IMG/VR virus record: IMGVR_UViG_3300020084_000003
Coordinates: 124,001-188,000 of that record
DNA: 64,000 nucleotides
Direction: 5' to 3' (one strand)
This document shows, in pieces, positions 283 through 64,000 of this stretch. A program made the position numbers and the translations under genes. Each line of letters opens with the position of its first letter. Within the stretch, counting starts at the first letter, position 1. The notes beneath the pieces are model-generated. The model was not told the origin of the DNA, made no database searches, and saw nothing but the letters and a program-made list of their open reading frames with translations.

Positions 283-717
283 ATGGACCCATACCAAATT
301 GGTGAAGGCTACAGAGAAACCATCTTTCACAAAAAAGGTGGTTTGTTTTAACTTGAAAAAGAAATAGTGTTGTCTTGTGTAAGATGGCACATTGGAAAAA
401 TGTTTATAATAAGCATCGAAATAAATGGGTTTGTAAAAGAAAAGAACATATCTATACCTATGCCAGATGGCATGGAGCCTATTGTATTTGAGAACAAAGA
501 TTACAAAAATATCTATACACCTGAAAACTTTGTGTATGACAAGGAAGTGGTCATTAAAAATAGAAACCTTGTGAGTGGAGTGATTTTTCGATTCTCTAGA
601 AACTCCGGTTCTGAAATAATAACTGCGCCAATGATATATCAAGATTGCATTTATTATACAAGTCACAAATATATACCTTTAACAATTAATAGTATACAGG
701 AAAACGACAATGGATAG
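283..717 (+). pseudogene. Paralog-array member interrupted by an in-frame TAA at 349-351, or a shorter CDS 367-717
   Basis: ATG 283 is in frame with ORF 367-717. The full span is 144 codons, matching its siblings. A TTGACA promoter element lies at 245, and the C-terminus has 'YQDCIY'. Confidence 0.45.
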
Positions 718-1129
718 TATTGAAGAAGCTATTAAAGAAATATATAAAACGACCTCTTTGAAGTTTGAATATAATGGCATCCATTGTGCAATTCACAAGA
801 AGCTGTTTAATGCGGAACTTTATGTGAATTTGGATCAGGCCGAAGATACAGAAAAGAGAATAGGCAAATATATTGGCTTTGATTTTGAATACGATATAAA
901 CAAGCATTTTCTTCCCAATACGAACATACAAATTCAAAAGAAACCAAATTTTGGCCTTGTTTTTGTCAACGAAGTAAAGCCCATTGAAATAAACCTTACG
1001 CTTGTGAGAAAGGAAGTAGAATATAAAACGAACACGTTATATAAAGGATGTGTTTTCAAAAGATCACAATGTTTAAATCCTGCGCGGTCTATTTTTGATA
1101 ACTGTGAAGGGGTAGATGGTTTAGAATAA
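710..1129 (+). CDS. Hypothetical protein, tandem paralog array
   Basis: 139-aa ORF overlapping the upstream stop, with a 'YKGCVF...FDNCE' motif. Confidence 0.75.
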   Translation: MDSIEEAIKEIYKTTSLKFEYNGIHCAIHKKLFNAELYVNLDQAEDTEKRIGKYIGFDFEYDINKHFLPNTNIQIQKKPNFGLVFVNEVKPIEINLTLVRKEVEYKTNTLYKGCVFKRSQCLNPARSIFDNCEGVDGLE

Positions 1130-1149
1130 CAACTCAATAGGATATAGAT

Positions 1150-1587
1150 ATGGAAAACGAGGTTTCAAAACTTATAGGTCGTTTCTTGGAAATTTCAAAA
1201 AAGAAGAACGATGATTATGAAGAATATTCTACCAGTGTCAAATCAGACGTTGAACCCCAGATGGACATTGCTTTAGAATTTTGGTATGATTTTTGCGAAA
1301 TTGTCGTAACGATATATTGTCATGCGTCAGTTTATGATGCTGAAAAATTCATAGTAGAATTGCCTAGTGGTGAAACGCTGTATTACAACCATTACTCTAC
1401 AAATACGGTCAACATTAGAAACATTGACACGAACGGATATGATATTCTCTTCTTTGTTGTATTTGAAAAAGAATACGAAGAAAAACAAGCAAAAGAAAGG
1501 TTAAATATCAAATATAAAAACTGCGTTGTAAACAATTATATGCTCTCTGATAATTCAGTAGAAGGATGTGAATTTTATGAAAGGTGA
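1150..1587 (+). CDS. Hypothetical protein, tandem paralog array
   Basis: 145 aa with an AGGA RBS and a 'YKNCVV...EGCEF' motif. Confidence 0.75.
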   Translation: MENEVSKLIGRFLEISKKKNDDYEEYSTSVKSDVEPQMDIALEFWYDFCEIVVTIYCHASVYDAEKFIVELPSGETLYYNHYSTNTVNIRNIDTNGYDILFFVVFEKEYEEKQAKERLNIKYKNCVVNNYMLSDNSVEGCEFYER

Positions 1588-1978
1588 TAGTAAAAAACTG
1601 GTGGATATTTACACTAGGCAAATGCAAGGGCTTGATACATCTCCATATAGGATATTGGTTAATCAATCGAAATATTTGGACGTTTATTCTATGGGGGTCG
1701 AAGATATCACTATGGAAGAGTTTGGAATTTCCAATATAGACCATGAACAGTTTAATCTGAAAACCATAAAAGACTCATTTCAAAAACCTGAATTTCATAG
1801 CTTTGAAGTTGATAACTTGATTCTCATATACCCATTAAGATTGACATTTTTTGTGGGAACTATAGAATACCATTTGAATGTAAAACATAATAACTGCATA
1901 TTCAAATTAGGCCAGAAGAAATACTATGAAACTATTAACGAGCATAATTGTGTATGGTGTTTAGATGATGTTGGGTAA
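1577..1978 (+). CDS. Hypothetical protein, tandem paralog array
   Basis: 'HNNCIF...HNCVW' motif. The start is probably MKGDSKK. Confidence 0.7.
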   Translation: MKGDSKKLVDIYTRQMQGLDTSPYRILVNQSKYLDVYSMGVEDITMEEFGISNIDHEQFNLKTIKDSFQKPEFHSFEVDNLILIYPLRLTFFVGTIEYHLNVKHNNCIFKLGQKKYYETINEHNCVWCLDDVG

Positions 1979-2393
1979 AACTGAAAACAAGCTACTTGAA
2001 ATGTCAAAAATAAGTGGAAATGGAGTAACTATAAGCATTGATCCGTATAAAGTAAAAATCATGATTAGATATGATGAATTTTGGCAATTCGCAGATATTA
2101 TTAGCAGTATATTCGATCAGCAAATTTCCGAAGAAGATTTCGAATTCTGCAAAGTTGTATATGGTGGTGCAATTGCGCCTGATGCAAAATACTTCATAAA
2201 CTCCTCTAGTTTTGCACATTTTCAAAACATGAAATTGGAAAAGCCCATATTGATAAATGGTAGAATAAAATCCACTAATCTTTATATCATCAATATGGAT
2301 TACACCAATTGCGTATTTGAATGTGAAAAGCCAGTAACAAAAATATATAAAATTGCCAGAAGCGATAAAGACTGCATATGGAGCAAAACATGA
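1965..2393 (+). CDS. Hypothetical protein, tandem paralog array
   Basis: Shares 'FAHFxNM..KPI.I...INMDYTxCxFxC' with the next ORF. Confidence 0.75.
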   Translation: MMLGKTENKLLEMSKISGNGVTISIDPYKVKIMIRYDEFWQFADIISSIFDQQISEEDFEFCKVVYGGAIAPDAKYFINSSSFAHFQNMKLEKPILINGRIKSTNLYIINMDYTNCVFECEKPVTKIYKIARSDKDCIWSKT

Positions 2394-2794
2394 GCATTGA
2401 AGAGACAATATTGGAACATTCCAAACATTCTAGAATTTTTATATTACTCAATAGTTCAAAAAACTACGATGTGCTAGAATATAATTACAGCAATTTCGGT
2501 GAATTTCAGGCAGAGATTGAAACCCTATTCAATGTGGATATAGAGAAAGATGATTTTGAGATATACGTGGATGATCCAATTACAGATATGCAACTGTTTA
2601 GGTATAAACATCAATTCGCTCATTTCAAAAACATGCATTTTAAAAAGCCCATAGTAATACGAGCATCATATGCATATGGAGATATATACCACTATATAAA
2701 CATGGACTATACTAGTTGCATATTTGATTGCAGTGAAAAATTGGTTAATACTAGATCAAGGGTCAAAACGGATTGTATATATTTGGGTGATTAA
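2390..2794 (+). CDS. Hypothetical protein, tandem paralog array
   Basis: Clear paralog of 1965-2393, with an ATGA overlap. Confidence 0.75.
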   Translation: MSIEETILEHSKHSRIFILLNSSKNYDVLEYNYSNFGEFQAEIETLFNVDIEKDDFEIYVDDPITDMQLFRYKHQFAHFKNMHFKKPIVIRASYAYGDIYHYINMDYTSCIFDCSEKLVNTRSRVKTDCIYLGD

Positions 2795-2806
2795 AAGGGT
2801 ATTGAA

Positions 2807-3226
2807 ATGAAGAATGACATAAGCAAATTTATCGGCTATTATGTGAATATGGCTAAAAAAGGAGAATTTCTGGATGAGATTGTTGATTCAATTTCTGAAA
2901 TTAAAATAGAAGTCAATTCATATGTGGGTTCCCAACATGCTCGATATTTAGATATTGAAGTAATTACACCATACCATATAGGAAATGACCCAATTATGCT
3001 TTTACCATCGAATGAAATATTTCATTTATATCATGATTTGATCGTATTGAAAAACCTCGCATTTAACGATATCCGAATACATATAGAAACCGATACTCCA
3101 TTTCCTAAAAATACGATCAATGTAAATGACGCATATAGATATAAAATCGAAATGATTAATTGCGTTTGTCCCGATTATAAAAGGGACATATATGAATTTA
3201 AAAACTGTGAAATATTTTCATGCTAG
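2807..3226 (+). CDS. Hypothetical protein, tandem paralog array
   Basis: The N-terminus MKNDISKFIG resembles MENEVSKLIG of 1150. It has a 'INCVC...FKNCEIF' motif. Confidence 0.75.
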   Translation: MKNDISKFIGYYVNMAKKGEFLDEIVDSISEIKIEVNSYVGSQHARYLDIEVITPYHIGNDPIMLLPSNEIFHLYHDLIVLKNLAFNDIRIHIETDTPFPKNTINVNDAYRYKIEMINCVCPDYKRDIYEFKNCEIFSC

Positions 3227-3485
3227 TTTGAGACACAACTAGGCAAAAGAACAAACCGTGAACAAAAAATCAGCTTGACAAAAATCGTGATTCTAAGATA
3301 TTCTGGTGGTGGACCCGAATCGAAATATGAGAATCAAAAAGAGCCAAGAATATCATAGGATCGAAACATGCGTCAAGTAAAAATAAGAACGAGGTTTTTT
3401 CATTTTAGGGCTTGCATTGAGATTGATTCTTCCCTAGATATGAAATCACCGAAACGGCGAACCCGCCAGCAAAAGGACAGTTATC

Positions 3486-3674
3486 ATGACCTACGATCAA
3501 GCCAATGCCGCCGCCCGCGTCCTGCGTGAAGCTGGTCAATATGATGCAGCAGAACATATGGAGGTAGTCGCGGAAACTGCCCGTCGCCAGCATTTCCAAG
3601 ACATGGCACAGAAATGCTATGACGACCCGGATTTTGCACTAGCCTATGAAGAGGACATGCGAGAATTTAGATAG
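3486..3674 (+). CDS. Small hypothetical early protein
   Basis: Own promoter, AAGGA RBS, and a terminator AAAAAGCCCTTTGGGGCTTTTTT at 3676-3700. Confidence 0.75.
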   Translation: MTYDQANAAARVLREAGQYDAAEHMEVVAETARRQHFQDMAQKCYDDPDFALAYEEDMREFR

Positions 3675-4000
3675 GAAAAAAGCCCTTTGGGGCTTTTTTT
3701 AATGCGTCCTGAGAACAAAACGTGAACGTGAAAACACCCCTGTTTTTGGCCTCTGAGCGGCCTTTGATGTTTCCGGGTAGGGTGATGAGGCATGACGGCG
3801 CAACGGGCTTCTACGGGCAAAATAGAGCGTCTGGGAACGTGTCTGCATCGGAACATGAGTCTTAGGGTATCAACTCGGCAAAAGAACAAACCATGAACAA
3901 AAAAAGATTCAAAAAAATGCGTTTTCCCTATTGCGAATCGGAACGGGAACGCATATTCTTTAGTTATAGAGACAGACACACACCAACCCCGGAGGCTACC

Positions 4001-4234
4001 ATGACCGCTCGCATCCAACTCGACACCTTCAACGGTCGCGGCTCGCAGCATCACCTGAAAAATCCGAAGACCCCGGCAGAAGAAAAAGCCCTGATCGCGG
4101 GCGGCTCTAAAGTCCGGTTTCAATCCACCCCTATCTCGAAAAAAGAAGAGGCGGAAAATTTCATCGCCGCCCGTGCGAAACTCGCCCGCAACAGCAAGGC
4201 AAAAGTCACTCTGGAAAAAGCCCCTTGGGAATAA
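4001..4234 (+). CDS. Small basic protein, VxLxxxPW-tail family (MTARIQLDTFNGRGSQHHLK...VTLEKAPWE)
   Basis: GGAGG RBS at 3991. Close paralog of 7841-8071. Confidence 0.8.
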   Translation: MTARIQLDTFNGRGSQHHLKNPKTPAEEKALIAGGSKVRFQSTPISKKEEAENFIAARAKLARNSKAKVTLEKAPWE

Positions 4235-4485
4235 GGGGAACGGGCGGGGGAAACCCCGCCTTCCTTGTTTCACGTGAAACAATCTCGCAATGAAAAAAGT
4301 TGAAAAAGGGGATTGACCAAAATCAGCAAGGCATGATATTCTGAAATAGAATCAAAAATTTTTTAGATGATTCGCATGAAGATTCTATTTCAGAATATCA
4401 CCGAATCACGATATCCGTCAAGAGGAAAAATCGTTCACGTTTTGTTCTCTATGGGGAAAAAGAAAAAGCCCCGAAGGGCTTGATC

Positions 4486-4764
4486 TTATGCCGCGAGGGC
4501 TTTCATCAAAATGTCTTCAAGTTCGGTTTCTTCCGGTTCATCTTCATAGATGCGGTTTTCCATGAAGAGCGGACCTTGCCACTTGTCCAACATGAAATTG
4601 AATTGCTTGCGGACAAGGCGCATTTTCCACTGAGTCCGAACCGAAATGAATTCGTCCATATAGAAAGAGGTATCAAATTCCATGATTTCCGAAAAAGTCA
4701 TGGCGGCGATTTCCGCGCGGATGGCGACGAAAGCAGCGCGGGCGAGTTTTTTGGATGTAAACAT
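4486..4764 (-). CDS. Hypothetical early protein (MFTSKKLA...)
   Basis: AAAGGA RBS and terminator AAAAAGCCCCGAAGGGCTT. Confidence 0.7.
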   Translation of the reverse strand: MFTSKKLARAAFVAIRAEIAAMTFSEIMEFDTSFYMDEFISVRTQWKMRLVRKQFNFMLDKWQGPLFMENRIYEDEPEETELEDILMKALAA

Positions 4765-4991
4765 GGCTGATCCTTTCCAGATCAAGAGGGTTAAAGCTGG
4801 CCGGAACCTCGTTCCGTTAAGACATAGATAGACCATGATTCTGATTCCCGCAAGAGATATTTTCAACTATTTTTCAGTTATTTTGGGGATTGACGCATTG
4901 CAATATCCTATGATATTCTTCCCGCCAGACCGAATCACGTTCACGTTTTGTTCTCTATAGGGAAAAAGAAAAAGCCCCGAAGGGCTTGATC

Positions 4992-5114
4992 TTATTTTTC
5001 CCAAGGGGCTTTTGGCAGGCTGACCGGTTTTTTCGGGGTTTCCACTACCATCTGCGCGAGTTTGGCATCGGTGGAGTTGAGGGCAGTCACTTGGATCATC
5101 TTTTGAACGAACAT
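4992..5114 (-). CDS. 40-aa peptide, VxLxxxPW-tail family (MFVQKMIQVTAL...PVSLPKAPWEK); not in the ORF track
   Basis: Read by hand. It has an AAGGA RBS, an upstream promoter and a downstream terminator. Confidence 0.7.
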   Translation of the reverse strand: MFVQKMIQVTALNSTDAKLAQMVVETPKKPVSLPKAPWEK

Positions 5115-5488
5115 TTCCGGTCTTCCTTCTCTGGACGCGACCCCTTGCCGCGTTTCCTGATTCCTAGATAGGCCATGATGGCGAGTCGTGCAAGAGGAAA
5201 AATGAAAAAAGTTTGCCCGCCGTAGACCCCTCTATTTTGGCCTGTGACGGGCATTGACGTTTCCGGGTAGGGCGATGCCCCTGTGAGCCTTGCGGGGCTT
5301 CCTACCGCGCCACAGCGACTAGGACGACATACCCCGGACGATCCAGACGTATTTTGTGACGAAAGGAATTGTGCGGATAGTCGGCACGGAATTTCTCGAC
5401 AGTCCGCACAAATAGGTCAGGGAATTGAGTCGCCCATGATACCATCATTTCAACTGTGACAGATGCGAGTCTTGGCTTTTGCATTTTG

Positions 5489-5923
5489 TTATCCCCATTT
5501 ATCAAATAGATTTCGACATTCATTATGCCATTCTTTCACAGATTTATTATATTCCAAATCACCTTTTAGAAATTCAGCATATGAAATTGCATCCTTTTCT
5601 CGGAAGAAAAGGAAATGGGCGTTGTATCCATTAAGCCCGCCGATATTGTAATCTTTAAGTGATCCGCCAGAAGAATATTCTTCACCCGTATATTGTGAAA
5701 TATAGGTATATGCAAAAGAACCTTTTTTGGTAAATGTTTCATCTTCATATTCAACGCCATTAATTTCATTAAATGACGCAATTTTAGTGAAATGTCTTTT
5801 AGCCAAATACCCGCCTTGCGATACTTCCCAAATATCGGAACCAGTGAGCAAATGCATTTGCTCGACTGTTTCAATTGCGCCTTTAGGATATTCCCGCGCA
5901 GTTGTTCCTTTAAGTTTAATCAT
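5489..5923 (-). CDS. Hypothetical protein
   Basis: 144-aa ORF with an AAGGA RBS. Confidence 0.65.
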   Translation of the reverse strand: MIKLKGTTAREYPKGAIETVEQMHLLTGSDIWEVSQGGYLAKRHFTKIASFNEINGVEYEDETFTKKGSFAYTYISQYTGEEYSSGGSLKDYNIGGLNGYNAHFLFFREKDAISYAEFLKGDLEYNKSVKEWHNECRNLFDKWG

Positions 5924-5952
5924 GTCTTTATCCTTTCCCTATATGTGGCCCC

Positions 5953-6219
5953 TTATCGGGACCACTTGCGATTGATGTTCCACTTTTCCACGACGAGTCC
6001 CGTTTCCGTTTCATCCGTCACGATATACGCGACAGTTTTCTTGACGAGGGCGAAACGGGTTTCTTGATTTGGCCCGACAAAAACCAGATGTTTATAATCG
6101 CGAAATTTGTCCTCGGGGAACGCAGTTGCGTTCATATACTCGAAAGTTTTGCCGTGATCTTTTTCCACGAACATTCCGGCGATTTTGTCTTGCGAGATAT
6201 GAGCGGGGGCATAGGACAT
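5953..6219 (-). CDS. Hypothetical protein
   Basis: AGGAG RBS and own promoter. Confidence 0.7.
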   Translation of the reverse strand: MSYAPAHISQDKIAGMFVEKDHGKTFEYMNATAFPEDKFRDYKHLVFVGPNQETRFALVKKTVAYIVTDETETGLVVEKWNINRKWSR

Positions 6220-6337
6220 GGCGCAACTCCTTTTGGCGCGGTGGGTTTATCCTGTGATACATGATTCGCCTGTCCATGTCAAACCATTATTTCGCCTTGA
6301 CGCACGAAACCGTTGTGTGCTAGTCGTGGAAGTCTGA

Positions 6338-6571
6338 ATGGCAAGGAAAGGAATCATTGTGCTGCCCACATATTACGCAATTGATATTGTTACATCTCGC
6401 AAGGGCTTGCTAATGATGGCGCAGTTTCTTGGGCTTATGGCTTACGGAAATGATTTTGTGCAAGGCAATCGCATGATGACATATGACGCGCGAAACAAGG
6501 TTTTGAGCGTTACGATGACAAAACAAGACGCACTAAAACTGTCGGAAAAATTCAACTTTGAGTTCCAGTGA
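6338..6571 (+). CDS. Hypothetical protein, paralog of 13754-13972
   Basis: Shared PTYYA..IVT...GNRM..YD...DAL.LS..FNFEF. A parS site follows immediately. Confidence 0.75.
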   Translation: MARKGIIVLPTYYAIDIVTSRKGLLMMAQFLGLMAYGNDFVQGNRMMTYDARNKVLSVTMTKQDALKLSEKFNFEFQ

Positions 6572-6756
6572 TTTGTTTCACGTGAAACAATAGCCTTAGA
6601 GTCTTCTAGGCAAAAGAACAAAACGTGAACAAGATTAGGGCTTGACAGCATCATGATTCGATGATATTCTGGACTAGAGACTCGAATCTTCTGGTGATAA
6701 AAATCAGGTTTTACTTTTAGAATATCATATCGAATCGGGGTAAGTAAAGGGGCAAA

Positions 6757-7158
6757 TTATGCCCCCTGAGTCTTTCTTATTAGTTCGCCCATTTCATAGC
6801 TGAACCCGTGCGACCAACAAAAGCCTTCCCGGTCATACTTTGAATTAACATCATCCCCCGTGGCGTCAAACTGCCAGCGGATAACATCGCCCACACGGGC
6901 GTTAAGTTGGACGGCGAGGGCATGAACCCCGCGAATCCAATCATTATATCGGCGGGTTTCATCCTCAACCCGTTGCGCCTCATTGCTGGCGAGTTGCGCG
7001 ACAAGGTAAGAATAATCCTCGTCAAAAGCCTCGACCGAAGCCCAGACGTTCCAGCCGCGCGGGCGGCACCCGTAAACGTCTTTGTAAAGATCGGAGTAGC
7101 AATCATCCACGATCATGCAAACGGAACCAGCGGCGAATTCTTGGTCTTGAGCGAACAT
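6757..7158 (-). CDS. Hypothetical phage protein (YSDLYKDVYGCRPRG motif)
   Basis: AAGGA RBS before MFAQ. The motif is typical of a widespread phage hypothetical family. Confidence 0.7.
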   Translation of the reverse strand: MFAQDQEFAAGSVCMIVDDCYSDLYKDVYGCRPRGWNVWASVEAFDEDYSYLVAQLASNEAQRVEDETRRYNDWIRGVHALAVQLNARVGDVIRWQFDATGDDVNSKYDREGFCWSHGFSYEMGELIRKTQGA

Positions 7159-7412
7159 GGCGATCATCCTTTTTTGCACAGTTTTCCCTCGGAGCATCGC
7201 GCCCCGCAACACCTACGTAGCAGGGAATCACCCTGCTTGTCAAGCGTATATGCAAAGAAAAAATCGAATTATTTGGGGTTGACAGGCCGGGCGATTCTAC
7301 GATATTCTGAAATAGAGAGTCTATGCGAATCACTTGGAAGATTCGAGATTCTATTTCAGAATATCACACTCAGATTTCATGTAAAGATAAAAAAAGCCCC
7401 GAAGGGCTTAAT

Positions 7413-7586
7413 TTATGAAAACTCCCGGTCTACTATTTCCAGACGTTCCCAGACTTGCGCCCACGTGGAGTCGGCGGGAAGATCACACAGAAACATTTCC
7501 GCGTGGAACGTTGCATTGTTTGCAACGTCAATGGCTTCTTCCAGCGACAGTTCGGGGCGGGCTTGGACTTGGGCGAGGATGGACAT
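7413..7586 (-). CDS. 57-aa acidic hypothetical protein (MSILAQVQARPEL...)
   Basis: Read by hand. AAGGA RBS and a terminator at 7390-7409. Confidence 0.6.
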   Translation of the reverse strand: MSILAQVQARPELSLEEAIDVANNATFHAEMFLCDLPADSTWAQVWERLEIVDREFS

Positions 7587-7840
7587 TTTCAGTTTCCTTC
7601 AAACATGGTTGGTTCCGAGGACGTTCCCCGTGCCTCATACGTAGCTGATTCTTGTGTTTGTGTCAATATAGGAAAAGCATTATTTTAGTTTATTTTTGGG
7701 GTTGACGTAAAAAGTGAGTATGATATTCTGGACTAGACTCTTGATTCTCGCGTTCACGATTCGTTCTCATTGTGGGTTGTTCACGTTTTGTTCTGTTTCA
7801 CGTGAAACAAAAGCCCCCCGTTTCCGAGGGGCTTTTCCTT

Positions 7841-8071
7841 TTACCAAGGCATCGCGGGGAGGGAGACTTTCGCGGTTGACTTGCGGGCGAGGCGGGCGCG
7901 GGCGGCTTTCGCGTTTTCGATTTCTTCCGCTTTCGTGATCGGAGTATGTTGAAAGCGGACCTTGTTCCCGCCAGCGATCAGAGCGGCCTCTTCCGCTTTG
8001 CTTTTGGGGTTTTTCAGGTGGTGTTGGCTTCCGCGACCGTTGAAGGTATCCAGTTGAACCGCTGCGACCAT
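7841..8071 (-). CDS. Small basic protein, VxLxxxPW-tail family (...VSLPAMPW)
   Basis: Paralog of 4001-4234 in inverted orientation. Confidence 0.8.
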   Translation of the reverse strand: MVAAVQLDTFNGRGSQHHLKNPKSKAEEAALIAGGNKVRFQHTPITKAEEIENAKAARARLARKSTAKVSLPAMPW

Positions 8072-8619
8072 CTTTCCGTTCCTTCCGCTGTGGGCCTCTG
8101 CCCGTTTCCATACTTAAAGAATATGCACTCTTGATCCGATTCGCAACCCCCCAAATGCACTTTTTTGAATCTTTTTTGTTCATGATTTGTTCTCAGGTTT
8201 CGCGGCGAAACTGCGTTCACGTTTTGTTCTTTGGCCCTCTATTTTGCGCTGTGAGCGGCCTTGTGGGTTTTCGGGTGTGTGGGTATGGCAAAAGCCCGTA
8301 GGAACCACCTACGGGCTTCTACGGGCTTGTGAGAGGCATTATCGAAAACCTAGTGCCGCTGCGAAAAACTCCTTGAATAGATCGAAGAAGATTAGCAGAG
8401 GAAGGATTACCGCCATCAGCTTGATGATGAGATAAACCTTTAGTAGTGTGATGAATGCCCCCATCAGGTTGTTTTGAGGATGTAAAGAGCAGCCAGACCC
8501 AGAAATCCAAACGCTACGATGAACAACATATTGTTTTCCTTTCACTTTCCTAGCGGGTTTCACAGACACAACTTGCCAGCATCAAATTGGTTTCATGATG
8601 CTGGCAAGATTCTTCTAAG

Positions 8620-8745
8620 TCACTCGTCTTTCAACTGAAATTTCTTGTGAACCCCCGACTCGTATTGCTTGCGGGCGCTTTTGTTCTTGCGCGCGTTGCG
8701 GATTTGTTGCTTGGCGTTGTTCTTGTCGCGCTTTTGGTCTTTCAT
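8620..8745 (-). CDS. 41-aa highly basic peptide (MKDQKRDKNNAKQQIRNARK...)
   Basis: Read by hand. AAGGA RBS and an upstream promoter. Confidence 0.55.
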   Translation of the reverse strand: MKDQKRDKNNAKQQIRNARKNKSARKQYESGVHKKFQLKDE

Positions 8746-8962
8746 GATCCGGGTTTCCTTCTGTTTCCGGGTTTCTGTATCTTGAATGTATGGGGGGCCA
8801 GATGATTCGTCAATAGGAAAAAATAGGAAAGATTCTTTTTATTTGGGGTTGACAGTGTGGGGTGGGGATAATATTCTGAAATAGAATCCAGAATCATCGT
8901 TCACGATTCGTTCTCATGGGGTTTCGCTGCGAAACTGTTTCACGTGAAACAATGACATTGCC

Positions 8963-9154
8963 CTAAAGCAATGCCATAAGTTGAAACATGATGATGATAG
9001 CAGACAAACAAATAGTAAGAAGAAACGAACAAGTCAAAGCGTTAACTGTATCTTTAGCAATCGCGCAACGGATGCTAAGGTTAAGCAAAATCAACCCCAT
9101 CATGCAAAACGTAGCAGTAGCGCAAGAAGCGATGAAAAGAAGAAAGTGTTCCAT
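8963..9154 (-). CDS. Small two-TM membrane protein
   Basis: Hydrophobic 63-aa ORF flanked by two parS sites. Confidence 0.55.
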   Translation of the reverse strand: MEHFLLFIASCATATFCMMGLILLNLSIRCAIAKDTVNALTCSFLLTICLSAIIIMFQLMALL

Positions 9155-9218
9155 ACTATTTTCCTTTTGTTTCACGTGAAACATAGGGGCGGGATGATCC
9201 CGCCCCCTGTTGATTGCA

Positions 9219-9524
9219 TCAGGCTTGCACCGCTTCCGCTTGTGCAGCACGTTCGGCACGTTTCGCCGCGTTGCGTTCCATCGTGGCAACCCACGTCCGC
9301 GCACGGCCCGTCAGGGCAGGAACATGGCGCGGACGACCACGCTTGCCTTCAATCCGTTGTTCCTGAATCTCGACCAGACCAGCCTCGACCAGTTGCGCCG
9401 TCAGGTGACGCGAAGGGATGTTTTCAGCATCGCCCGCCTTGATCGCGACCAGCGCGGCAAGCTTGGCCTCTTTGCTGTTGAAGGTTGCCGGGCGACCACG
9501 GGCGGCTTTGATTTCTTTCGTCAT
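9219..9524 (-). CDS. AT-hook (RGRP) / winged-helix-like DNA-binding protein, copy 1
   Basis: Two RGRP motifs and the pattern 'PSRH...LVEAGLVE...RGRP..VPALTG'. Paralogs at 13167, 23299 and 25705. Confidence 0.75.
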   Translation of the reverse strand: MTKEIKAARGRPATFNSKEAKLAALVAIKAGDAENIPSRHLTAQLVEAGLVEIQEQRIEGKRGRPRHVPALTGRARTWVATMERNAAKRAERAAQAEAVQA

Positions 9525-11024
9525 GATGTAGTCCTTTCTTTGCTGTTGGGCGTCTTGCCCGTTTCCATGATTAAGAGATAGAGCATGATTCTGATTCGTG
9601 CAAGCACAAAATGCGATAGGAACGAAAATAGTTTTTGCATCTTCTCGGCAAAAGAACAAAACGTGAACGAATAGGTTTCGCGGCGAAACCACGACGCAAT
9701 GAGAACGAATCATGAACGGTGATTCTGGATTCTATTTCAGAATATCATACTCAGGTTTAGTGTCAACAAGAAAAAAAGCCCCGAAGGGCTTTTCCTCATT
9801 CCATGAAGTTTTCAAATTCTGTCCAGCTATATTCTTCCGCAACCCCATAGGTTTCTTGGAATTGCTTGAACTCACGTTCTGCCGCATCGTGCGAAAGATT
9901 GTAGTGGGTGAGCAGGAGGTTCATAATGTCTGCGGGCGAGAGCATGGCGGGTTCCTTTCCCTTGGCTATGATTAAGATATAGCATCAGATTGTGATTCGT
10001 GCAAGAGGTAAAATGACTTTTTTCAAATTATTTTTGGGGTTGACAGGATAGGGGAGGGGATGATATTCTGAAATAGAATCAAGAATCACCGTTCATGATT
10101 CGTTCTTATAGGTTTCGCCGCGAAACTGTTTCACGTGAAACAAAAGAAAGAGGGGGCGTTATGCCCCCTGTTTCCATCCTTCTGCGATTTTTTCTTGCAT
10201 ATCATCAAATGCGATATGTTTGGGGATAACGGTTTGCGTCATAGCTTTACCATCCCAATACAGAGTCGCAGTTACATCTTCGTGCCCGAAAGTGGACTCG
10301 TAGGTGATTTTGAGGTTGGAGTTGGTAATAGTAATCATGGCGGGGTTCCTTTCCTTTGCCGATTATTCTTTATAGCATTAGCGGCAGGTTGCGTCAACAG
10401 GAAAATGCGTCACCAGATAGATCAAATGAATCCTTTCACAATGTGCGGATTCTTTGAAATAGTGATTTGTTGCTTTGATGAAAGCAAACCGGAACGGGCG
10501 AAATGCCAGACGTTTATTGCGATAGACACGGGAACAGATAGGTTCCCAACGGAAACCGCGCAGAAACTTGTGGTTCCACTCGCAGGAACGATAGTAATGA
10601 GTCAAGTCGCGCATTGCCTTATCTCCTGCTAGGGTTTCCATCTATATTTATAGTTGCACGATTCGGGTGTCTATGTCAATATCTAAAAAATAATTGTGAC
10701 GCGAACATGACACTTGCAAACAACCTAAACGGGTGCTAAGGTTCTGGCAGTTGTAACGAAAGGAGCGAATCATGTTTGATATTGTCAAGAAAATAATTAC
10801 ATTCCCCGGAAAATTTGTCGATTGGTTTGAGGCGGAACGTGGAACTGGTGAAGGAAAAAATGGTTGGGTAGGTAAACCATCGCGGGACTAGGGAGGATGA
10901 AAGACTCCTCTTTTCCCTATTGACAGCATGGGGAGGGCATGATATTCTGAAATAGAATCTTGATTCTTGCGTTCATGATTCGTTCTTTTGCGGATAAAAG
11001 AAAAAGCCCCGAAGGGCTTTCCTG

Positions 11025-11213
11025 TTACCAAGGGGCTTTTGCCAGAGTGACTTTGACTTTCCGCTTTGCCGCTGCGCGTTTCTCTTGAGCCAGAGCGAAA
11101 GCCTTTTCATCTTTTGCGGTAATGGCAGGAGCGGCACAATTTCCGCAACGCTTCTCAAAATCGACCCGGTTCATGTTAGCGTGGGAATTGAAGTATTGAG
11201 CGGAGACTTGCAT
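11025..11213 (-). CDS. Small basic protein, VxLxxxPW-tail family (...KVTLAKAPW)
   Basis: Own promoter, RBS and terminator. Shared C-terminal motif. Confidence 0.75.
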   Translation of the reverse strand: MQVSAQYFNSHANMNRVDFEKRCGNCAAPAITAKDEKAFALAQEKRAAAKRKVKVTLAKAPW

Positions 11214-11318
11214 CGGGTTGCCCTTTCTTGGCTGGTGTAATTATAGAATATGCCTTGCCAGATGATTCGTCAACAGGAAAAATGAAGTTTTTTGAATCTT
11301 TTTTGTTCACGGTTTGTT

Positions 11319-11837
11319 CTATATATAACCATGTTCCCGTTCTGCTTCATTTCTAGCAACTATTGCATCATCCAATTCTTTGAATCTTCCTATATGTTTT
11401 CTTTTACCATTTCCATCTCTAATTCTGACAACATAAGCATTTTTGAAAAAGTATATATTTCTTTCTTTTAACTTATTAGGTTTAACTACATTTTTATAAT
11501 TAATACTTTGTGAAACATCTCTAAGATTTTTTATTCTATTATCTTTTTTATCTTTATTAATATGATCTATCTCACATTTAGGCCATTCGCCGTAAACAAA
11601 AGCCCACGCTAATCTATGTGCGGAACAAATAATTTCATTATCCGCATATCCCAAATATATGTAACCATTTTTGTTAGACCCTGCAATTTTACCAGAATAC
11701 TCATTATTCCAATTAAGTTTTCTTTTAGTATTATATGGACGATGGTGTTCTTTTCTTTCTTTCCAATAAAATAATCCAGTATCTTTATTATAAGAAACTA
11801 GTTCTTTCCATAATTCTAAATTAGAATCACTTTTCAT
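11319..11837 (-). mobile_element. Freestanding HNH homing endonuclease with a C-terminal AP2-like domain
   Basis: 'AHRLAW..VYGEWP..EIDHINKDKKDNRIKNLR' and 'HIGRFKELDDAIVARNEAE'. AT-rich relative to its flanks. Confidence 0.85.
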
Positions 11838-11883
11838 GCTATACTCCTTTTTATTCGGAGCATAGCATGAAAATATTAAATTG

Positions 11884-11976
11884 TCAATCCTTCCAAGGAT
11901 AGGGCGGGAGGCTGACGGGCTTGCTCGACTCTTTCTGCGAGGCAAGGGCTTGAGCGATTTTCTTTTGCTTGGACAT
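11884..11976 (-). CDS. 30-aa peptide, VxLxxxPW-tail family (MSKQKKIAQALASQKESSKPVSLPPYPWKD); not in the ORF track
   Basis: Read by hand. AAGGA RBS and an upstream promoter. Confidence 0.65.
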   Translation of the reverse strand: MSKQKKIAQALASQKESSKPVSLPPYPWKD

Positions 11977-12190
11977 TCGGGCTTTCCTTCTGCTTTCCCG
12001 TTTCCTTATCTAATAGATAGCCCATCCCAACATGATTCGCAAGAGGTATGATGCAGATTCTTTTTTTATTTTGTGCATTGACAGGTTGCGGGGTTGTGTG
12101 ATATTCTGCGCGACCAATTGACCAGATGATTCGTTGTTTCACGTGAAACATAAAGAAAAGGGCAGAGGTTTACCCCCTGCCCCTATGCCT

Positions 12191-12622
12191 TTACAATGCC
12201 CGCAGCCATTCCAGAACGTCGCCGGGAACCTCTTTCCGCAGCCATGCGCTGCCGTATGTGTAGGGCTTGCCGTTGTGCAGATAGGTTGCATCGTGCAAAA
12301 TATCGGCGGGCATTTGTTCCAGAATGTCTTGATATGCCCGCACCCCAGATTGTGCAATCCATGCCTCTTGCGCGGGTGATCCTGCCGTCAAGTCATTCAG
12401 ATGCCAATCTTTCCAGATTTGGTAAAGTTTGGCAATCTTACCAACAGTCCAGCCCGGCGCAGTTTCCGTGATGTTAAGCAGTTCATCACGGATTTGTCCA
12501 TAGGCAATGTTTCCGACATTGCCGCAAATCGACAGATTGTCGCCTTCTTTAATTCCAATTTCCACCACGACCGGGCGATGGTCGATTTTGCCGATAGTGA
12601 GTTTCTTGAACATTTTTCGCAT
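12191..12622 (-). CDS. Hypothetical phage protein (WHLNDLTAG...Y.YGSAWL motif)
   Basis: GAGG RBS and cassette promoter. Confidence 0.75.
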   Translation of the reverse strand: MRKMFKKLTIGKIDHRPVVVEIGIKEGDNLSICGNVGNIAYGQIRDELLNITETAPGWTVGKIAKLYQIWKDWHLNDLTAGSPAQEAWIAQSGVRAYQDILEQMPADILHDATYLHNGKPYTYGSAWLRKEVPGDVLEWLRAL

Positions 12623-12975: not shown

Positions 12976-13166
12976 TTTGTTCTCCTGTTTCTGATGATTC
13001 TGTTATGCCATATCCATTCCGAGTCGTCAACATTTTTCTTTCTATTGACAGGTTGCGGGGTTGTGTGATATTCTCGCCCGCCCTGCCCCTGCCCGATTCG
13101 CATTGGAATGTTTCACGTGAAACAAAAGCAAGAGGGGCAAGGTTTCCCCTGCCCCTCTCTCTTGTC

Positions 13167-13457
13167 TTAGGCTTCCGCCTTGGCAGCGCGACGGGCCGCG
13201 TTGCGTTCCATAGTCGCAAGCCACGAACGGGCTTTGCCGGTCAGGGCAGGGACATGAGCGGGACGGCCACGCTTGCCAGTAGGTTCCGCCGTTTTCATCT
13301 CGACCCGGCCCATCTCGACCAGTTTCAGCAGCAGATGGCGCGAGGGGATGTTCTCAGCATCGCCCGTATGGATGGCGCGGAGTGCAGCCACGATGGCGTC
13401 ACGGTTGGCGAAAGTAGCGGGACGGCCACGGGCGGCTTTGGTTTCGGTGTTGGTCAT
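13167..13457 (-). CDS. AT-hook (RGRP) / winged-helix-like protein, copy 2
   Basis: Close paralog of 9219-9524. Confidence 0.75.
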   Translation of the reverse strand: MTNTETKAARGRPATFANRDAIVAALRAIHTGDAENIPSRHLLLKLVEMGRVEMKTAEPTGKRGRPAHVPALTGKARSWLATMERNAARRAAKAEA

Positions 13458-13753
13458 GAGGTAGTTCCTTTCTCGTTTGTGGGCGTCTTGCCCGTTTCCA
13501 TGAACTATAGATGCCACATGGATTCGATTCGTGCAAGAGGAAAAATGACTTCCAAGCGAAAAAAGTTGTAAGCCGTTGAAAGTAAACGGAAACTTTCTTT
13601 TCTTTATGAGAATCACCCCATGCGCGGGCGCGAGAGAATATCACAAGGAACGGGCATGGGTCAAGGGTAAAAATGATTTGGTGCAATTGAACTTTGGGGT
13701 TGTGCTTGCGTTGGGGATGTGTCAGAACTGACAGGACGCAACAACAGAAGGAA

Positions 13754-13972: not shown

Positions 13973-14173
13973 AAGAAAGAAAGAGGCAGGGGAAACCCTG
14001 CCTCTTTTGTTTCACGTGAAACAGTTTCGCAGCGAAACCACCGAATCACTTTTCACGTGAACGCGGGAGAATATCAAATAAATAACTATAGGTCAACAGG
14101 AAAGATTGAGTTGACAAACCGTTCTGGTTGTGCGAGTATTGGAATCAGAACTCAAACATGAAAGGAATCGAAA

Positions 14174-16655: not shown

Positions 16656-16824
16656 TTGGGTTCCTTTCCCTTGCTGATGATTCTTTATCGCATATCCGAA
16701 AGCAGATTGCAAGAACTTTTTTGGGGTTGACGATACATCCCTTCCCATGATATTCTCCCGCTCCAACTGCCTAGATGATTCGTTGTTTCACGTGAAACAT
16801 AAAAGAAAAGAGGGGCAATGCCCC

Positions 16825-29607: not shown

Positions 29608-29759
29608 TTTTCTCCTGTGCTGGTGTGATTCTCTTATGCCATAGTGAAAACGATTCTGCAAGCGAAAAGATTCCTTGACACCTTATGCCAATCCATGATA
29701 TTCTTTGGCCGTTTCCGAATCAGAAAGAGAAGGTGTGACATTTCTGCCACACCCTTTCC

Positions 29760-62939: not shown

Positions 62940-64000
62940 TTATAGAATGCGGAACTTTTTGTTTTCATAAATGAACTCAAGTCTACCTGAATTGCCATCA
63001 AGAATGAAATCAGTAACTTGCGGCTCAAGCTGTGAAATAATGAAGCCGGGAAGACCACGCGCACCTGTTCTAGCATCATAATTTTCTTCACAGAATTTTT
63101 CAATGCAAGCATCACTAACCACAACATCAACATTGGAATGTTTGTAAGAATTCGCAACGTCAACCAGTTCACGCTTAACAATCTTTTCAATTGAATCAAG
63201 TTCAAGACGGTTAAAGCAAATGATGTTCTGACGGCCATTGAAACGGTTTAGGAATTCTGGACGATATTGCTCATCCAAATCAACCTTAGCCAATTTCTCA
63301 GCATCATCAAAGGACAGGTCCATATTAAGGAAATGAGGCTGACCGATGTTTGTTGTCATAATGATAATAGATTCCGAGAAATCTGCAACACGACCAACGT
63401 TATCAGTAAGACGCCCATCATCCAGAATTTGAAGGAAAAGGTTGAACACATCTGGGTGCGCCTTTTCAATCTCATCGAACAGGATGATTCGGTTTCTATT
63501 CTTTCGCATCTCATTTGTCAAGATGCCACCAGCTTCAAAGCCCTCGTAACCCGGAGGCGCACCAATTAGTTTAGAAACTGCATGACGCTCCATGTATTCC
63601 GACATATCAAAGCGCAGCAAAGCCTTAGCATCACCCTGTAGGGCTTCTGCAATTCTTTTAGCAACTTCTGTCTTGCCAACACCTGACGGACCCATGAACA
63701 GGAAACTGGCCTGCGGCTTGTTTTTATTCCGACGCCCAACACGTGACACTTTAATTGCGTTGGATGATTTCACCAGAACATGATCCTGACCGAAAACATG
63801 ACTTTTAAGAATTGTTTCAAGATTACGTAGAATCTCTTTTTCATCTTCGTCAAGTTTGTTTGCAGCAATACCAGTAATACGTGAAAATTCCTTTACGACT
63901 TCATCACGGGTAAGCATTAGATCAGCATTCATAATTTCAGTTAGTTCATCAAATTCTTTCTTTGATTTGATTACTTCTTCCTTTGCTACTTCTAGCATCT
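62940..64000 (-). CDS. ClpA/ClpB-family AAA+ chaperone, C-terminal part (gene continues beyond the window)
   Basis: 'GPSGVGKTE', 'DMSEYMERHAVSKLIGAPPGY', 'FDEIEKAHPDV', 'RPEFLNR', 'GARGL'. Confidence 0.9.
   Translation of the reverse strand, partial: MLEVAKEEVIKSKKEFDELTEIMNADLMLTRDEVVKEFSRITGIAANKLDEDEKEILRNLETILKSHVFGQDHVLVKSSNAIKVSRVGRRNKNKPQASFLFMGPSGVGKTEVAKRIAEALQGDAKALLRFDMSEYMERHAVSKLIGAPPGYEGFEAGGILTNEMRKNRNRIILFDEIEKAHPDVFNLFLQILDDGRLTDNVGRVADFSESIIIMTTNIGQPHFLNMDLSFDDAEKLAKVDLDEQYRPEFLNRFNGRQNIICFNRLELDSIEKIVKRELVDVANSYKHSNVDVVVSDACIEKFCEENYDARTGARGLPGFIISQLEPQVTDFILDGNSGRLEFIYENKKFRIL

What the first reader, a model, noticed from the sequence alone, without database searches (positions are those of the whole stretch)
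4001..11976. Five small basic proteins sharing a C-terminal (K/P)V(S/T)LxxxPW motif
Seen: 4001-4234 (KVTLEKAPWE), 4992-5114 (PVSLPKAPWEK), 7841-8071 (KVSLPAMPW), 11025-11213 (KVTLAKAPW) and 11884-11976 (PVSLPPYPWKD). Lengths range from 30 to 77 aa and the bodies are mostly unrelated. Two are below the ORF-track cutoff, and each has its own promoter. Inference: a short linear docking motif that targets or saturates one host protein, amplified by gene dosage.
Basis: partly seen in the sequence, partly recalled or inferred. Interest (0 to 1): 0.68.

Follow-up and report, generated by a model that had tools for sequence, protein, structure and literature searches.

The report
Small phage proteins sharing a tail motif
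A 285-kb freshwater phage encodes five small, basic, separately promoted early proteins that all end in the same short peptide (K/P-V/I-S/T-L-x4-W); related phages keep this peptide under protein-level selection, so it is probably a docking handle, but its partner is unknown.

Summary
The pattern V[ST]L...PW occurs five times in the six-frame translation of the 64-kb window. All five hits lie 0-2 residues before a stop codon and between 4.0 and 12.0 kb; shuffles give 0.07 hits. Each ORF has a 17-nt-spaced sigma-70-like promoter and a Shine-Dalgarno site, and four have an intrinsic terminator.

The five bodies are not mostly unrelated. A, C and D belong to one ~77-aa family. B and E belong to a ~30-40-aa family that keeps only a short helix, a basic linker and the motif.

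Homologues exist only in metagenomes. Three related phage contig groups each carry two or three members. Motif codons vary synonymously, and dN/dS between A and C is about 0.14. There is no match in Pfam, PHROGs, NCBIfam or PDB. AlphaFold gives two helices and an extended tail (pLDDT 64).

Best reading: a C-terminal short linear motif that docks these early proteins on one shared partner. The closest functional parallel is the clamp-binding tails of T4 gp43/gp55/gp33. The partner was not identified; a test against a Caulobacter beta clamp gave no answer.

Repeats flanking these genes (GTTC-N7-GTTC boxes, GANTC enrichment) point to an alphaproteobacterial host.

The parts
4001..4234 (+). Gene A, 77 aa, long family; tail ...KAKVTLEKAPWE
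   Evidence: ORF. 74% identical to C. Identical to database protein P0012. dN/dS versus C about 0.14.
3931..3959 (+). Promoter-like site of A: TTGCGA, 17 nt, TATTCT. GGAGG at 3991-3995, 5 nt before the ATG.
   Evidence: Read. The same hexamers and spacing occur upstream of paralogue C.
4242..4261 (+). Intrinsic terminator-like hairpin of A, 8 nt after the stop
4992..5114 (-). Gene B, 40 aa, short family; tail ...KKPVSLPKAPWEK
   Evidence: ORF. The 5'UTR hairpin, Shine-Dalgarno site and tail are shared with short ORFs L122:3760-3861 and L125:2610-2701. A B-like ORF is in L121:3962-4099.
5175..5203 (-). Promoter-like site of B: TTGCAC, 17 nt, TATCTA
   Evidence: Read.
4972..4987 (-). Terminator hairpin of B (GCCCTTCGGGGC followed by a T run), 5 nt after the stop
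7841..8071 (-). Gene C, 76 aa, long family; tail ...TAKVSLPAMPW
   Evidence: ORF. 15 further homologues at 68-86% identity in metagenomes. AlphaFold2 gives helices 25-38 and 47-64 and an extended tail.
8118..8146 (-). Promoter-like site of C: TTGCGA, 17 nt, TATTCT
   Evidence: Read.
7814..7831 (-). Terminator hairpin of C, 10 nt after the stop; T-rich on both sides
11025..11213 (-). Gene D, 62 aa, diverged and shortened member of the long family; tail ...KRKVKVTLAKAPW
   Evidence: Aligns with P0019 and L122:3223-3456 over the N-terminal FN motif and the C-terminal 33 residues. The orthologue in L121 is 76% identical but has lost the tail.
11245..11273 (-). Promoter-like site of D: TTGACG, 17 nt, TATTCT
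11001..11022 (-). Terminator hairpin of D, 3 nt after the stop
11884..11976 (-). Gene E, 30 aa, short family; tail ...SKPVSLPPYPWKD. Its last codons overlap the -35 hexamer of the next gene.
12014..12042 (-). Promoter-like site of E: TTGCGA, 17 nt, TATCTA
   Evidence: Read. The same promoter sequence precedes the B-like gene of L121.
11319..11837 (-). AT-rich HNH_3 homing-endonuclease gene inserted between E and D. Not part of the family, but it sets E's present C-terminus.
   Evidence: Pfam HNH_3, E=3.9e-15. Promoter TTGACA at 11887-11882.
3884..3898 (-). GTTC-N7-GTTC box about 75 nt upstream of A's inferred transcription start. Equivalent boxes lie upstream of C (8178-8192, 8215-8229) and D (11305-11319).

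Best explanation
A-E are real, translated early genes of a T4-related jumbo phage. Together they form one family of small, basic, largely disordered proteins.

Their common functional unit is the C-terminal module. It consists of a short Ala-rich helix, a Lys/Arg linker and the peptide [KP]-[VI]-[ST]-L-x4-[WF], with Pro at -1 or -2 relative to the aromatic residue.

I infer that this peptide is a short linear docking motif. The V-x-L part would lie as an extended strand in a hydrophobic groove, and the Trp would fill a neighbouring pocket. This would tether every family member to the same partner.

The long forms (A, C, D) would bring a second, N-terminal binding surface (FNGRGSQHHLKNPK...). 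The short forms (B, E) would act mainly as occupants of the site.

The partner is not identified. My ranking of candidates is inference only:
1. A nucleic-acid machine: a sliding clamp (phage or host) or RNA polymerase.
2. A chaperone or protease substrate site.
3. Nucleic acid itself.

What is shown: the genes, the family, the motif, its conservation, the selection on it and the expression signals. What is inferred: docking, and the identity and origin of the partner.
For: The motif is far above chance: 5 hits against 0.07 in shuffles.

Selection acts on the protein. Between A and C, pS is 0.70, pN is 0.24 and dN/dS is about 0.14. Within the motif, the V, S/T and L codons differ between copies.

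The motif is conserved in related phages on two scaffolds. L122 has three members, L125-127 have two and L121 has two with the Trp. In 25 tails, V/I is present in 25, L in 23 and W/F in 25 at a fixed L+5 spacing.

The short family keeps only the helix, linker and motif, and also keeps its 5'UTR and Shine-Dalgarno site across phages.

The number of residues after the Trp varies from 0 to 5, so the peptide is read, not the free carboxylate.

The AlphaFold2 model has low confidence, with two helices and an extended tail. That fits a disordered protein that folds on binding.

Promoters, Shine-Dalgarno sites and terminators flank each gene.

There is a precedent in the same phage family. T4 gp43, gp55 and gp33 share an interchangeable short C-terminal clamp-binding epitope joined by an unstructured linker (PMC2988020).
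Against: No partner was found. The only complex tried, C residues 40-76 with two copies of the Caulobacter beta clamp, scored 0.23 against a mark of 0.32, which is no verdict.

There are no expression or proteomic data; the source is a metagenome.

The D orthologue of L121 lost the tail, and P0018 ends in GNGFN, so the motif can be dispensed with.

A, B and D share 13 identical bases across K-A-P-W, and the Pro before Trp is always CCT. Some nucleotide-level constraint or recent gene conversion is therefore not excluded.

No larger protein in the ~94 kb of the contig that could be read carries the motif.
Confidence: 0.45

Rival explanations
1. The tail is an address tag read by the phage's own machinery, not a host-directed handle. 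It could be a packaging signal that loads small basic proteins into the prohead, as the capsid-targeting sequence does for T4 internal proteins. Or it could be a degron that times the removal of early proteins.
For: T-even internal proteins are diverse small basic proteins that share only a short terminal targeting peptide (PMC3012670). The pattern here is similar: varied bodies and one shared terminal peptide. The phage encodes a Clp/Hsp100-type AAA+ protein next to rIIA.
Against: The genes have sigma-70-type early promoters and no T4-type late promoter TATAAATA nearby. The motif is C-terminal, with no protease-site signature. The phage Clp-like protein has no N-domain, and I found no ClpA/ClpC-type ClpP-docking loop in its sequence, so it looks like a disaggregase and not a protease partner (my reading).
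Confidence: 0.15
2. The basic proteins bind nucleic acid directly, either phage or host DNA or ribosomal or messenger RNA. The tail would be part of that contact, with the Trp stacking on a base and the lysines on the backbone. The GTTC-N7-GTTC boxes or the 16-bp palindrome next to the genes could be their sites.
For: Net charge is +7 in about 76 residues, with Lys/Arg clusters just before the motif. The predicted structure is disordered. Boxes and palindromes are highly over-represented around these genes, and the boxes sit at a fixed -74/-75 upstream of A, C and D. The same elements occur in the related contigs that carry the family.
Against: No known DNA- or RNA-binding domain was detected. 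A strict V-[ST]-L...P-W hydrophobic pattern is more typical of protein-protein contacts. Boxes also flank genes without the motif. The box position may only reflect duplication of whole cassettes.
Confidence: 0.15
3. The tail acts in cis as a nascent peptide. A Pro/Trp-rich sequence just before the stop slows or arrests the ribosome. Because the terminator stem starts only 3-10 nt after the stop, the ribosome would change terminator folding or mRNA fate.
For: Pro-rich tails end at or near the stop. The Pro before Trp is CCT in 10 of 10 PW tails, although neighbouring early genes use CCT for 4 of 32 prolines. Terminator stems begin 3-10 nt after the stops of A-D.
Against: The distance from the Trp to the stop varies from 0 to 5 residues. 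Neighbouring genes without the motif have equally close terminators. The genes look monocistronic, so there is no obvious downstream gene to regulate. CCT-TGG is also the only Pro-Trp pair (3 of 3) in long ORFs elsewhere in the window.
Confidence: 0.1
4. The shared tail has no function of its own. It is carried along because promoter-gene-terminator cassettes in this region duplicate and recombine through their repeated flanks. B and E would then be decaying 3' fragments of the long gene.
For: The region is built of repeated promoter, terminator, palindrome and box modules. A, B and D share 13 identical bases over K-A-P-W. The D orthologue in L121 lost the tail.
Against: Synonymous sites between A and C are near saturation while the motif residues are kept. 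The short ORFs keep start codon, Shine-Dalgarno site, 5'UTR hairpin and the distinctive K-P-V-S-L-P signature in three separate phage lineages, with different codons.
Confidence: 0.1

Closest known systems
Sliding-clamp-binding C-terminal epitope of T4 gp43, gp55 and gp33
   Same: It occurs in a T4-family phage. It is a short hydrophobic C-terminal peptide on a flexible linker, shared by otherwise unrelated proteins, some of them small (gp33 is 112 aa) and made early or in the middle period (PMC2988020). From memory, the T4 and RB69 epitopes also begin with Ser/Thr-Leu.
   Different: The T4 epitopes are hydrophobic and acidic; these tails are hydrophobic and basic and end in Pro-Trp. No clamp or polymerase of this phage could be read, so sharing of the motif with the polymerase is untested. 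There are five copies here, and two are little more than the tail.
Capsid-targeting sequence of T-even internal proteins (IPI, IPII, IPIII and their polymorphic relatives)
   Same: These are diverse small basic proteins of a T4-type phage that share only a short terminal peptide (PMC3012670).
   Different: From memory, the T4 signal is N-terminal and is removed by the prohead protease. Here the peptide is C-terminal, and the genes have early-type promoters and no late promoter.
Bacterial beta-clamp-binding motif (QL[SD]LF / QLxLxL), used also by phage inhibitors of DnaN
   Same: Both have a hydrophobic residue, then Ser, then Leu core (V-S-L-P compared with L-S-L-P of Hda-type motifs; from memory). 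Both are often located at a protein terminus.
   Different: The leading Gln is replaced by Lys or Pro. Positions 5-6 are not hydrophobic. An extra Pro-Trp lies four to five residues on. The docking test gave no verdict.
SSB C-terminal tip (...D-D-D-I-P-F) as a hub-binding peptide
   Same: Both are terminal hydrophobic-Pro-aromatic tripeptides. Some homologues here end exactly in L-P-F. Both sit on a disordered tail.
   Different: From memory, SSB tips are acidic and use the free carboxylate of the last Phe. These tails are basic and tolerate 0-5 residues after the aromatic residue.
Proline-rich antimicrobial peptides of the oncocin/pyrrhocoricin type (K-P-x-Y-L-P-R-P), which bind DnaK and the ribosome
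   Same: From memory, both are basic and Pro-rich with a central Leu-Pro: K-P-V-S-L-P-K-A-P compared with K-P-P-Y-L-P-R-P.
   Different: The resemblance covers a few residues only. Those are secreted insect peptides with no terminal Trp. Nothing was tested.

Membership tests
Any curated protein family (Pfam-A, PHROGs v4, NCBIfam, PDB sequences) | Significant profile or sequence match | tested here: not met
   No Pfam family at E<=0.1. Only chance-level PHROG matches, best E=0.0044 and not shared between members. NCBIfam matches are far below the cut-offs. The profile of 22 sequences finds nothing in PDB at E<=10.
Bacterial beta-clamp-binding motif | Gln at position 1 of the penta- or hexapeptide | tested here: not met
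   The position before V/I is K in 20, P in 4 and R in 1 of 25 tails.
Bacterial beta-clamp-binding motif | Hydrophobic residues at positions 2 and 4, with Ser or Asp between them | tested here: met
   V/I in 25 of 25, S/T in 23 of 25 and L in 23 of 25 tails.
Bacterial beta-clamp-binding motif | Phe at position 5, or Leu at position 6 | tested here: not met
   Position 5 is P, A, D, V or L. Position 6 is mostly K.
Bacterial beta-clamp-binding motif | Docks in the clamp's hydrophobic pocket | tested here: inconclusive
   C residues 40-76 with two copies of DPO3B_CAUVC scored 0.22 and 0.23 against a mark of 0.32. The tool's verdict was 'no answer'.
T4-type clamp (gp45) epitope | The same C-terminal peptide is present on the phage's DNA polymerase and late-transcription factors | not testable with these tools
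   Polymerase, clamp and gp55/gp33 homologues lie outside the ~94 kb of the contig that could be read (window).
T4-type clamp (gp45) epitope | Hydrophobic and acidic composition | tested here: not met
   The tails are flanked by Lys/Arg. Acidic residues occur only after the Trp. The T4 composition is taken from PMC2988020.
T-even internal proteins | N-terminal capsid-targeting sequence and late expression | tested here: not met
   The shared peptide is C-terminal. There is no TATAAATA near the genes. The promoters are sigma-70-like.
SSB-type C-terminal tip | Acidic run followed by Pro-Phe at the very C-terminus | tested here: not met
   The preceding residues are basic, and 0-5 residues follow the aromatic residue.

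The most novel reading that the evidence does not exclude
The [VI]-[ST]-L-x4-W tail is a previously undescribed hub-docking peptide of a lineage of freshwater T4-related jumbo phages that probably infect alphaproteobacteria. Several early proteins, including 30-aa mini-proteins that are little more than the peptide, would use it to occupy or re-purpose one central machine of the infected cell, such as a clamp, RNA polymerase or a chaperone. This would be a basic counterpart of the T4 clamp epitope, used for host takeover.
Probability: 0.3. Interest if true: 0.65.

Novelty: new variant of a known kind. Interest (0 to 1): 0.5.

Why it matters
Small early phage proteins are where most unknown host-takeover mechanisms are found, and they are usually impossible to group. 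This study defines a family by a nine-residue peptide that is under selection and sits on two scaffolds. That gives a concrete experimental handle: a wild-type versus Trp-to-Ala peptide pull-down could find the cellular or phage hub it addresses. If the hub is a conserved bacterial machine, the 30-aa forms would be natural minimal ligands for it. The surrounding regulatory repeats also allow a host prediction for an uncultured 285-kb phage.

Tried and rejected
- Near-identity DNA search of 3800-12200 against GenBank phages: no match.
- tblastn of C against the same collection at E<=1: no match.
- Scans for relatives of the long family in IMG/VR, JGI metagenomes and GTDB genomes found only this phage's own contigs.
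- A motif-coding DNA pattern found only gene A in IMG/VR.
- The 16-bp palindrome as a probe for relatives returned about 120 unrelated contigs without the family.
- A word-indexed search with B found only itself.
- Rfam and tRNA scans of the window were empty.
- Complex prediction, C residues 40-76 with the Caulobacter beta-clamp dimer: no verdict at 0.23 against a mark of 0.32, so it counts neither for nor against.
- I walked 30 kb to the right of the window, up to contig position 216 kb, to find the phage's polymerase or clamp and check their C-termini. That stretch holds a Clp/Hsp100-like ATPase, Thg1, an RNA ligase, NAD-salvage genes, class Ib ribonucleotide reductase, thymidylate synthase, DHFR and lysis-like genes. 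It holds no replisome gene and no further motif ORF.
- I considered a degron for the phage Clp-like ATPase and set it aside: the protein has no N-domain, and I saw no ClpP-docking loop.
- I did not run a fold search on the AlphaFold model because its confidence is too low to be meaningful.

Full report
SOURCE

The window is positions 124,001-188,000 of a 284,776-bp viral contig from a Lake Tanganyika metagenome (IMGVR_UViG_3300020084_000003 = Ga0194110_10000009). The right half encodes rIIA, rIIB, a Dda-like helicase, DNA and RNA ligases and phosphoesterases. The phage is therefore a T4-related jumbo phage. GenBank phages hold nothing close. The best rIIA matches are about 50% identical over the N-terminal part and come from phages of Ruegeria, Rhodobacter and Phaeobacter.

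THE OBSERVATION

All five ORFs exist as described. The pattern V[ST]L...PW occurs exactly five times in the six-frame translation of the 64 kb. Every hit is 0-2 residues before a stop and lies between 4.0 and 12.0 kb. Shuffles that keep local composition give 0.07 hits per window and 0.01 near a stop. About 1 Mb of unrelated viral DNA gave one strict hit.

The proteins are basic, with net charge +3 to +7.

Each gene is preceded by a promoter-like pair of hexamers with a 17-nt spacer:
- A and C: TTGCGA...TATTCT
- D: TTGACG...TATTCT
- B: TTGCAC...TATCTA
- E: TTGCGA...TATCTA

Each also has a Shine-Dalgarno-like purine run. A-D are followed within 3-10 nt by a GC-rich hairpin and a T run. The start at 4001, not the longer ORF from 3893, is the right one for A. 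The promoter lies inside the longer ORF, and the homologues begin at the corresponding Met.

THE FIVE ARE ONE FAMILY WITH TWO FORMS

A and C are 74% identical. D aligns with more distant homologues (P0019, L122:3223-3456) at the N-terminal F-N motif and over the last 33 residues. It has lost the middle of the protein.

B and E share a short Ala/Ile-rich helix, a basic linker and the signature K-P-V-S-L-P. So do short ORFs that gene callers missed in related contigs: L122:3760-3861, L125:2610-2701 and L121:3962-4099. B shares its 5'UTR hairpin and ribosome-binding site with the L122 and L125 copies. What is shared across all members is the C-terminal module of helix, linker and motif.

CONSERVATION AND SELECTION

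The long form has 15 further homologues at 68-86% identity and a few down to about 35%. All come from metagenome assemblies. It has none in IMG/VR other than this phage, and none in GTDB genomes.

Three related contig groups carry several members each:
- L122 has three.
- L125, L126 and L127 have two.
- L121 has three.

Aligned on the aromatic residue, 25 tails give K/P (-8), V/I (-7; 25 of 25), S/T (-6; 23), L (-5; 23), P (-1; 22) and W/F (0; 25). Where Pro is not at -1 it is at -2 (P-A-W, I-P-E-W), and the Leu-to-Trp spacing stays the same. Zero to five residues follow the Trp.

Between A and C the synonymous sites are near saturation (pS 0.70) while pN is 0.24, so dN/dS is about 0.14. Other pairs give 0.14-0.46. 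Inside the motif the Val, Ser/Thr and Leu codons differ from copy to copy. The selection is therefore on the peptide.

Two exceptions show the tail can be lost. The D orthologue of L121 stops at ...KITLG, and P0018 ends in ...GNGFN.

WHAT KIND OF PROTEIN

No family in Pfam, PHROGs or NCBIfam and no PDB sequence matches. AlphaFold2 with a 22-row alignment gives a mean pLDDT of 64, two helices (25-38, 47-64) and an extended tail.

A conserved hydrophobic pattern at the end of a flexible basic tail, present on two scaffolds, is what a short linear docking motif looks like. That is my best explanation (confidence 0.45).

The closest functional precedent in the same phage family is the short C-terminal epitope shared by T4 DNA polymerase, gp55 and gp33. 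It binds the sliding clamp, sits on an unstructured linker and is interchangeable between these proteins (PMC2988020). The T4 epitope is acidic, while this one is basic and ends in Pro-Trp.

The second precedent is the capsid-targeting sequence shared by otherwise diverse T-even internal proteins (PMC3012670). From memory, that signal is N-terminal. The genes here carry early-type promoters, with no T4 late promoter nearby.

THE PARTNER

The partner is not identified. I tried one complex, the last 37 residues of C with a dimer of the Caulobacter beta clamp. It scored below the mark, which the tool treats as no answer.

I could not reach the phage's own clamp or polymerase. Thirty kilobases to the right of the window hold metabolic and lysis-like genes only, and no further motif ORF.

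The phage's Clp/Hsp100-like ATPase lacks an N-domain, and I saw no ClpP-docking loop in it. A phage-specific degron reading therefore has little support.

RIVALS

- An address tag for packaging or timed degradation (0.15).
- Direct nucleic-acid binding (0.15).
- A nascent-peptide effect on the adjacent terminator (0.10). This reading is suggested by the invariant CCT-TGG codon pair, found in 10 of 10 PW tails while neighbouring early genes use CCT for 4 of 32 prolines. The variable distance from the Trp to the stop argues against it.
- A functionless passenger of cassette duplication (0.10). The preservation of the short ORFs in three lineages with different codons argues against it.

CONTEXT WORTH RECORDING

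The early region is built from repeated modules.

A 16-bp perfect palindrome, TGTTTCACGTGAAACA, occurs ten times, against none expected. In L122 it appears as TGCTTCACGTGAAGCA, changed symmetrically on both arms.

A box GTTCA[CT]G[ATG]TT[TC]GTTC occurs 16 times between 3.2 and 11.4 kb. The pattern GTTC-N7-GTTC gives 17 hits against 1.9 expected. GTTC-N7-GTTC is the SOS-box consensus listed for Caulobacter crescentus (PMC9578287).

GANTC is twofold enriched between 3.2 and 32 kb, mostly as CGAATC directly after the -35 hexamers. From memory, GANTC is the target of the alphaproteobacterial CcrM methylase.

Together with the rIIA relatives, these features suggest an alphaproteobacterial host.

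About two dozen very strong promoter-like sites (TTGAC-N19-TATTCT, usually with TG before the second hexamer) lie almost all on the + strand, opposite to the genes. Each is followed after 20-110 nt by the two-way terminator of the upstream gene. They would produce short antisense RNAs. In six cases the GTTC-N7-GTTC box lies 20-23 nt after the -10 hexamer. I did not pursue this further.

VERDICT

It is one family of small early proteins defined by a selected C-terminal peptide, conserved in a small lineage of uncultured phages. The docking-motif reading is reasonable but unproven, and 'host protein' and 'dosage' remain guesses. Novelty: a new variant of a known kind, namely shared terminal peptides on small T4-family proteins. 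Interest: moderate.

Noticed in passing
window 3249-11319 (16 copies; e.g. 4433-4447, 7752-7766, 7779-7793, 10091-10105): The box GTTCA[CT]G[ATG]TT[TC]GTTC is a GTTC-N7-GTTC direct repeat with 17 hits against 1.9 expected. It matches the SOS-box (LexA) consensus listed for Caulobacter (PMC9578287). It lies about 75 nt upstream of the inferred starts of A, C and D, and 20-23 nt after the -10 hexamer of six opposite-strand promoters. It is also present in related contigs L121 and L122.
   Followed up: partly
window 3275-38018, e.g. 4890-4919, 10040-10069, 12078-12107, 29675-29704: There are about 24 near-consensus promoters TTGAC-N19-TATTCT (25 matches against 2.1 expected), and 21 are on the + strand, opposite to the coding strand. 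Each fires into the two-way terminator of the neighbouring gene after 20-110 nt. They would make short antisense RNAs, and they sit back to back with the weaker gene-strand promoters. At 3275/3376 and 4313/4421 two such promoters face each other within an inverted repeat.
   Followed up: partly
window 4266-4281, 6574-6589, 7794-7809, 8936-8951, 9168-9183, 10127-10142, 12135-12150, 13109-13124, 14008-14023, 16784-16799: A perfect 16-bp palindrome, TGTTTCACGTGAAACA, occurs ten times (0 expected), usually just after a terminator. In L122 it reads TGCTTCACGTGAAGCA, changed symmetrically on both arms. This suits either a dimeric binding site or a hairpin.
   Followed up: partly
window 3200-32000: GANTC is about twofold over-represented (119 against 52.6 +/- 7.2, and 107 against 55.5 +/- 7.3), mostly as CGAATC/GATTCG next to -35 hexamers. 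From memory, GANTC is the CcrM methylation site of alphaproteobacteria. This is a lead to the host and to methylation-dependent promoter control.
   Followed up: partly
motif codons of A-E, and of L122, L125 and L128: The Pro before the Trp is CCT in 10 of 10 PW tails, although the other motif codons vary and neighbouring early genes use CCT for only 4 of 32 prolines. The two P-F tails use CCC-TTC. This is unexplained.
   Followed up: partly
window 11319-11837 (-): An AT-rich HNH_3 homing-endonuclease gene with its own promoter is inserted directly after E. Its -35 hexamer overlaps E's last two codons and stop. A second HNH_3 gene splits the ribonucleotide reductase genes at L132:3230-3763.
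   Followed up: partly
window 62940-63998 (-), complete in L132:17470-19533: A phage-encoded 687-aa Clp/Hsp100-type double AAA+ protein. It has no N-domain. Its first Walker A motif lacks the Lys (GPSGVGST). It has a coiled-coil insert, and I saw no ClpP-docking loop. It looks like a ClpB-like remodeller.
   Followed up: partly
window 710-3226 (+): A head-to-tail row of six ORFs of 136-145 aa in a 32% GC stretch, next to the 46% GC early region. They look like paralogues, but I did not compare them.
   Followed up: no
window 9219-9524 (-) and 13167-13616 (-): Two paralogous small basic proteins with R-G-R-P (AT-hook-like) motifs. They share 70-81% DNA identity over about 175 bp (repeat families D3, D13, D18) and have a homologue in L121.
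   Followed up: no
L132 and L133 (contig 186-216 kb): To the right of the window lie Thg1-like, RNA ligase, NAMPT and NMNAT/Nudix (NAD salvage), nucleoside deoxyribosyltransferase, class Ib ribonucleotide reductase with NrdI, thymidylate synthase and DHFR genes, followed by lysis-like genes.
   Followed up: no
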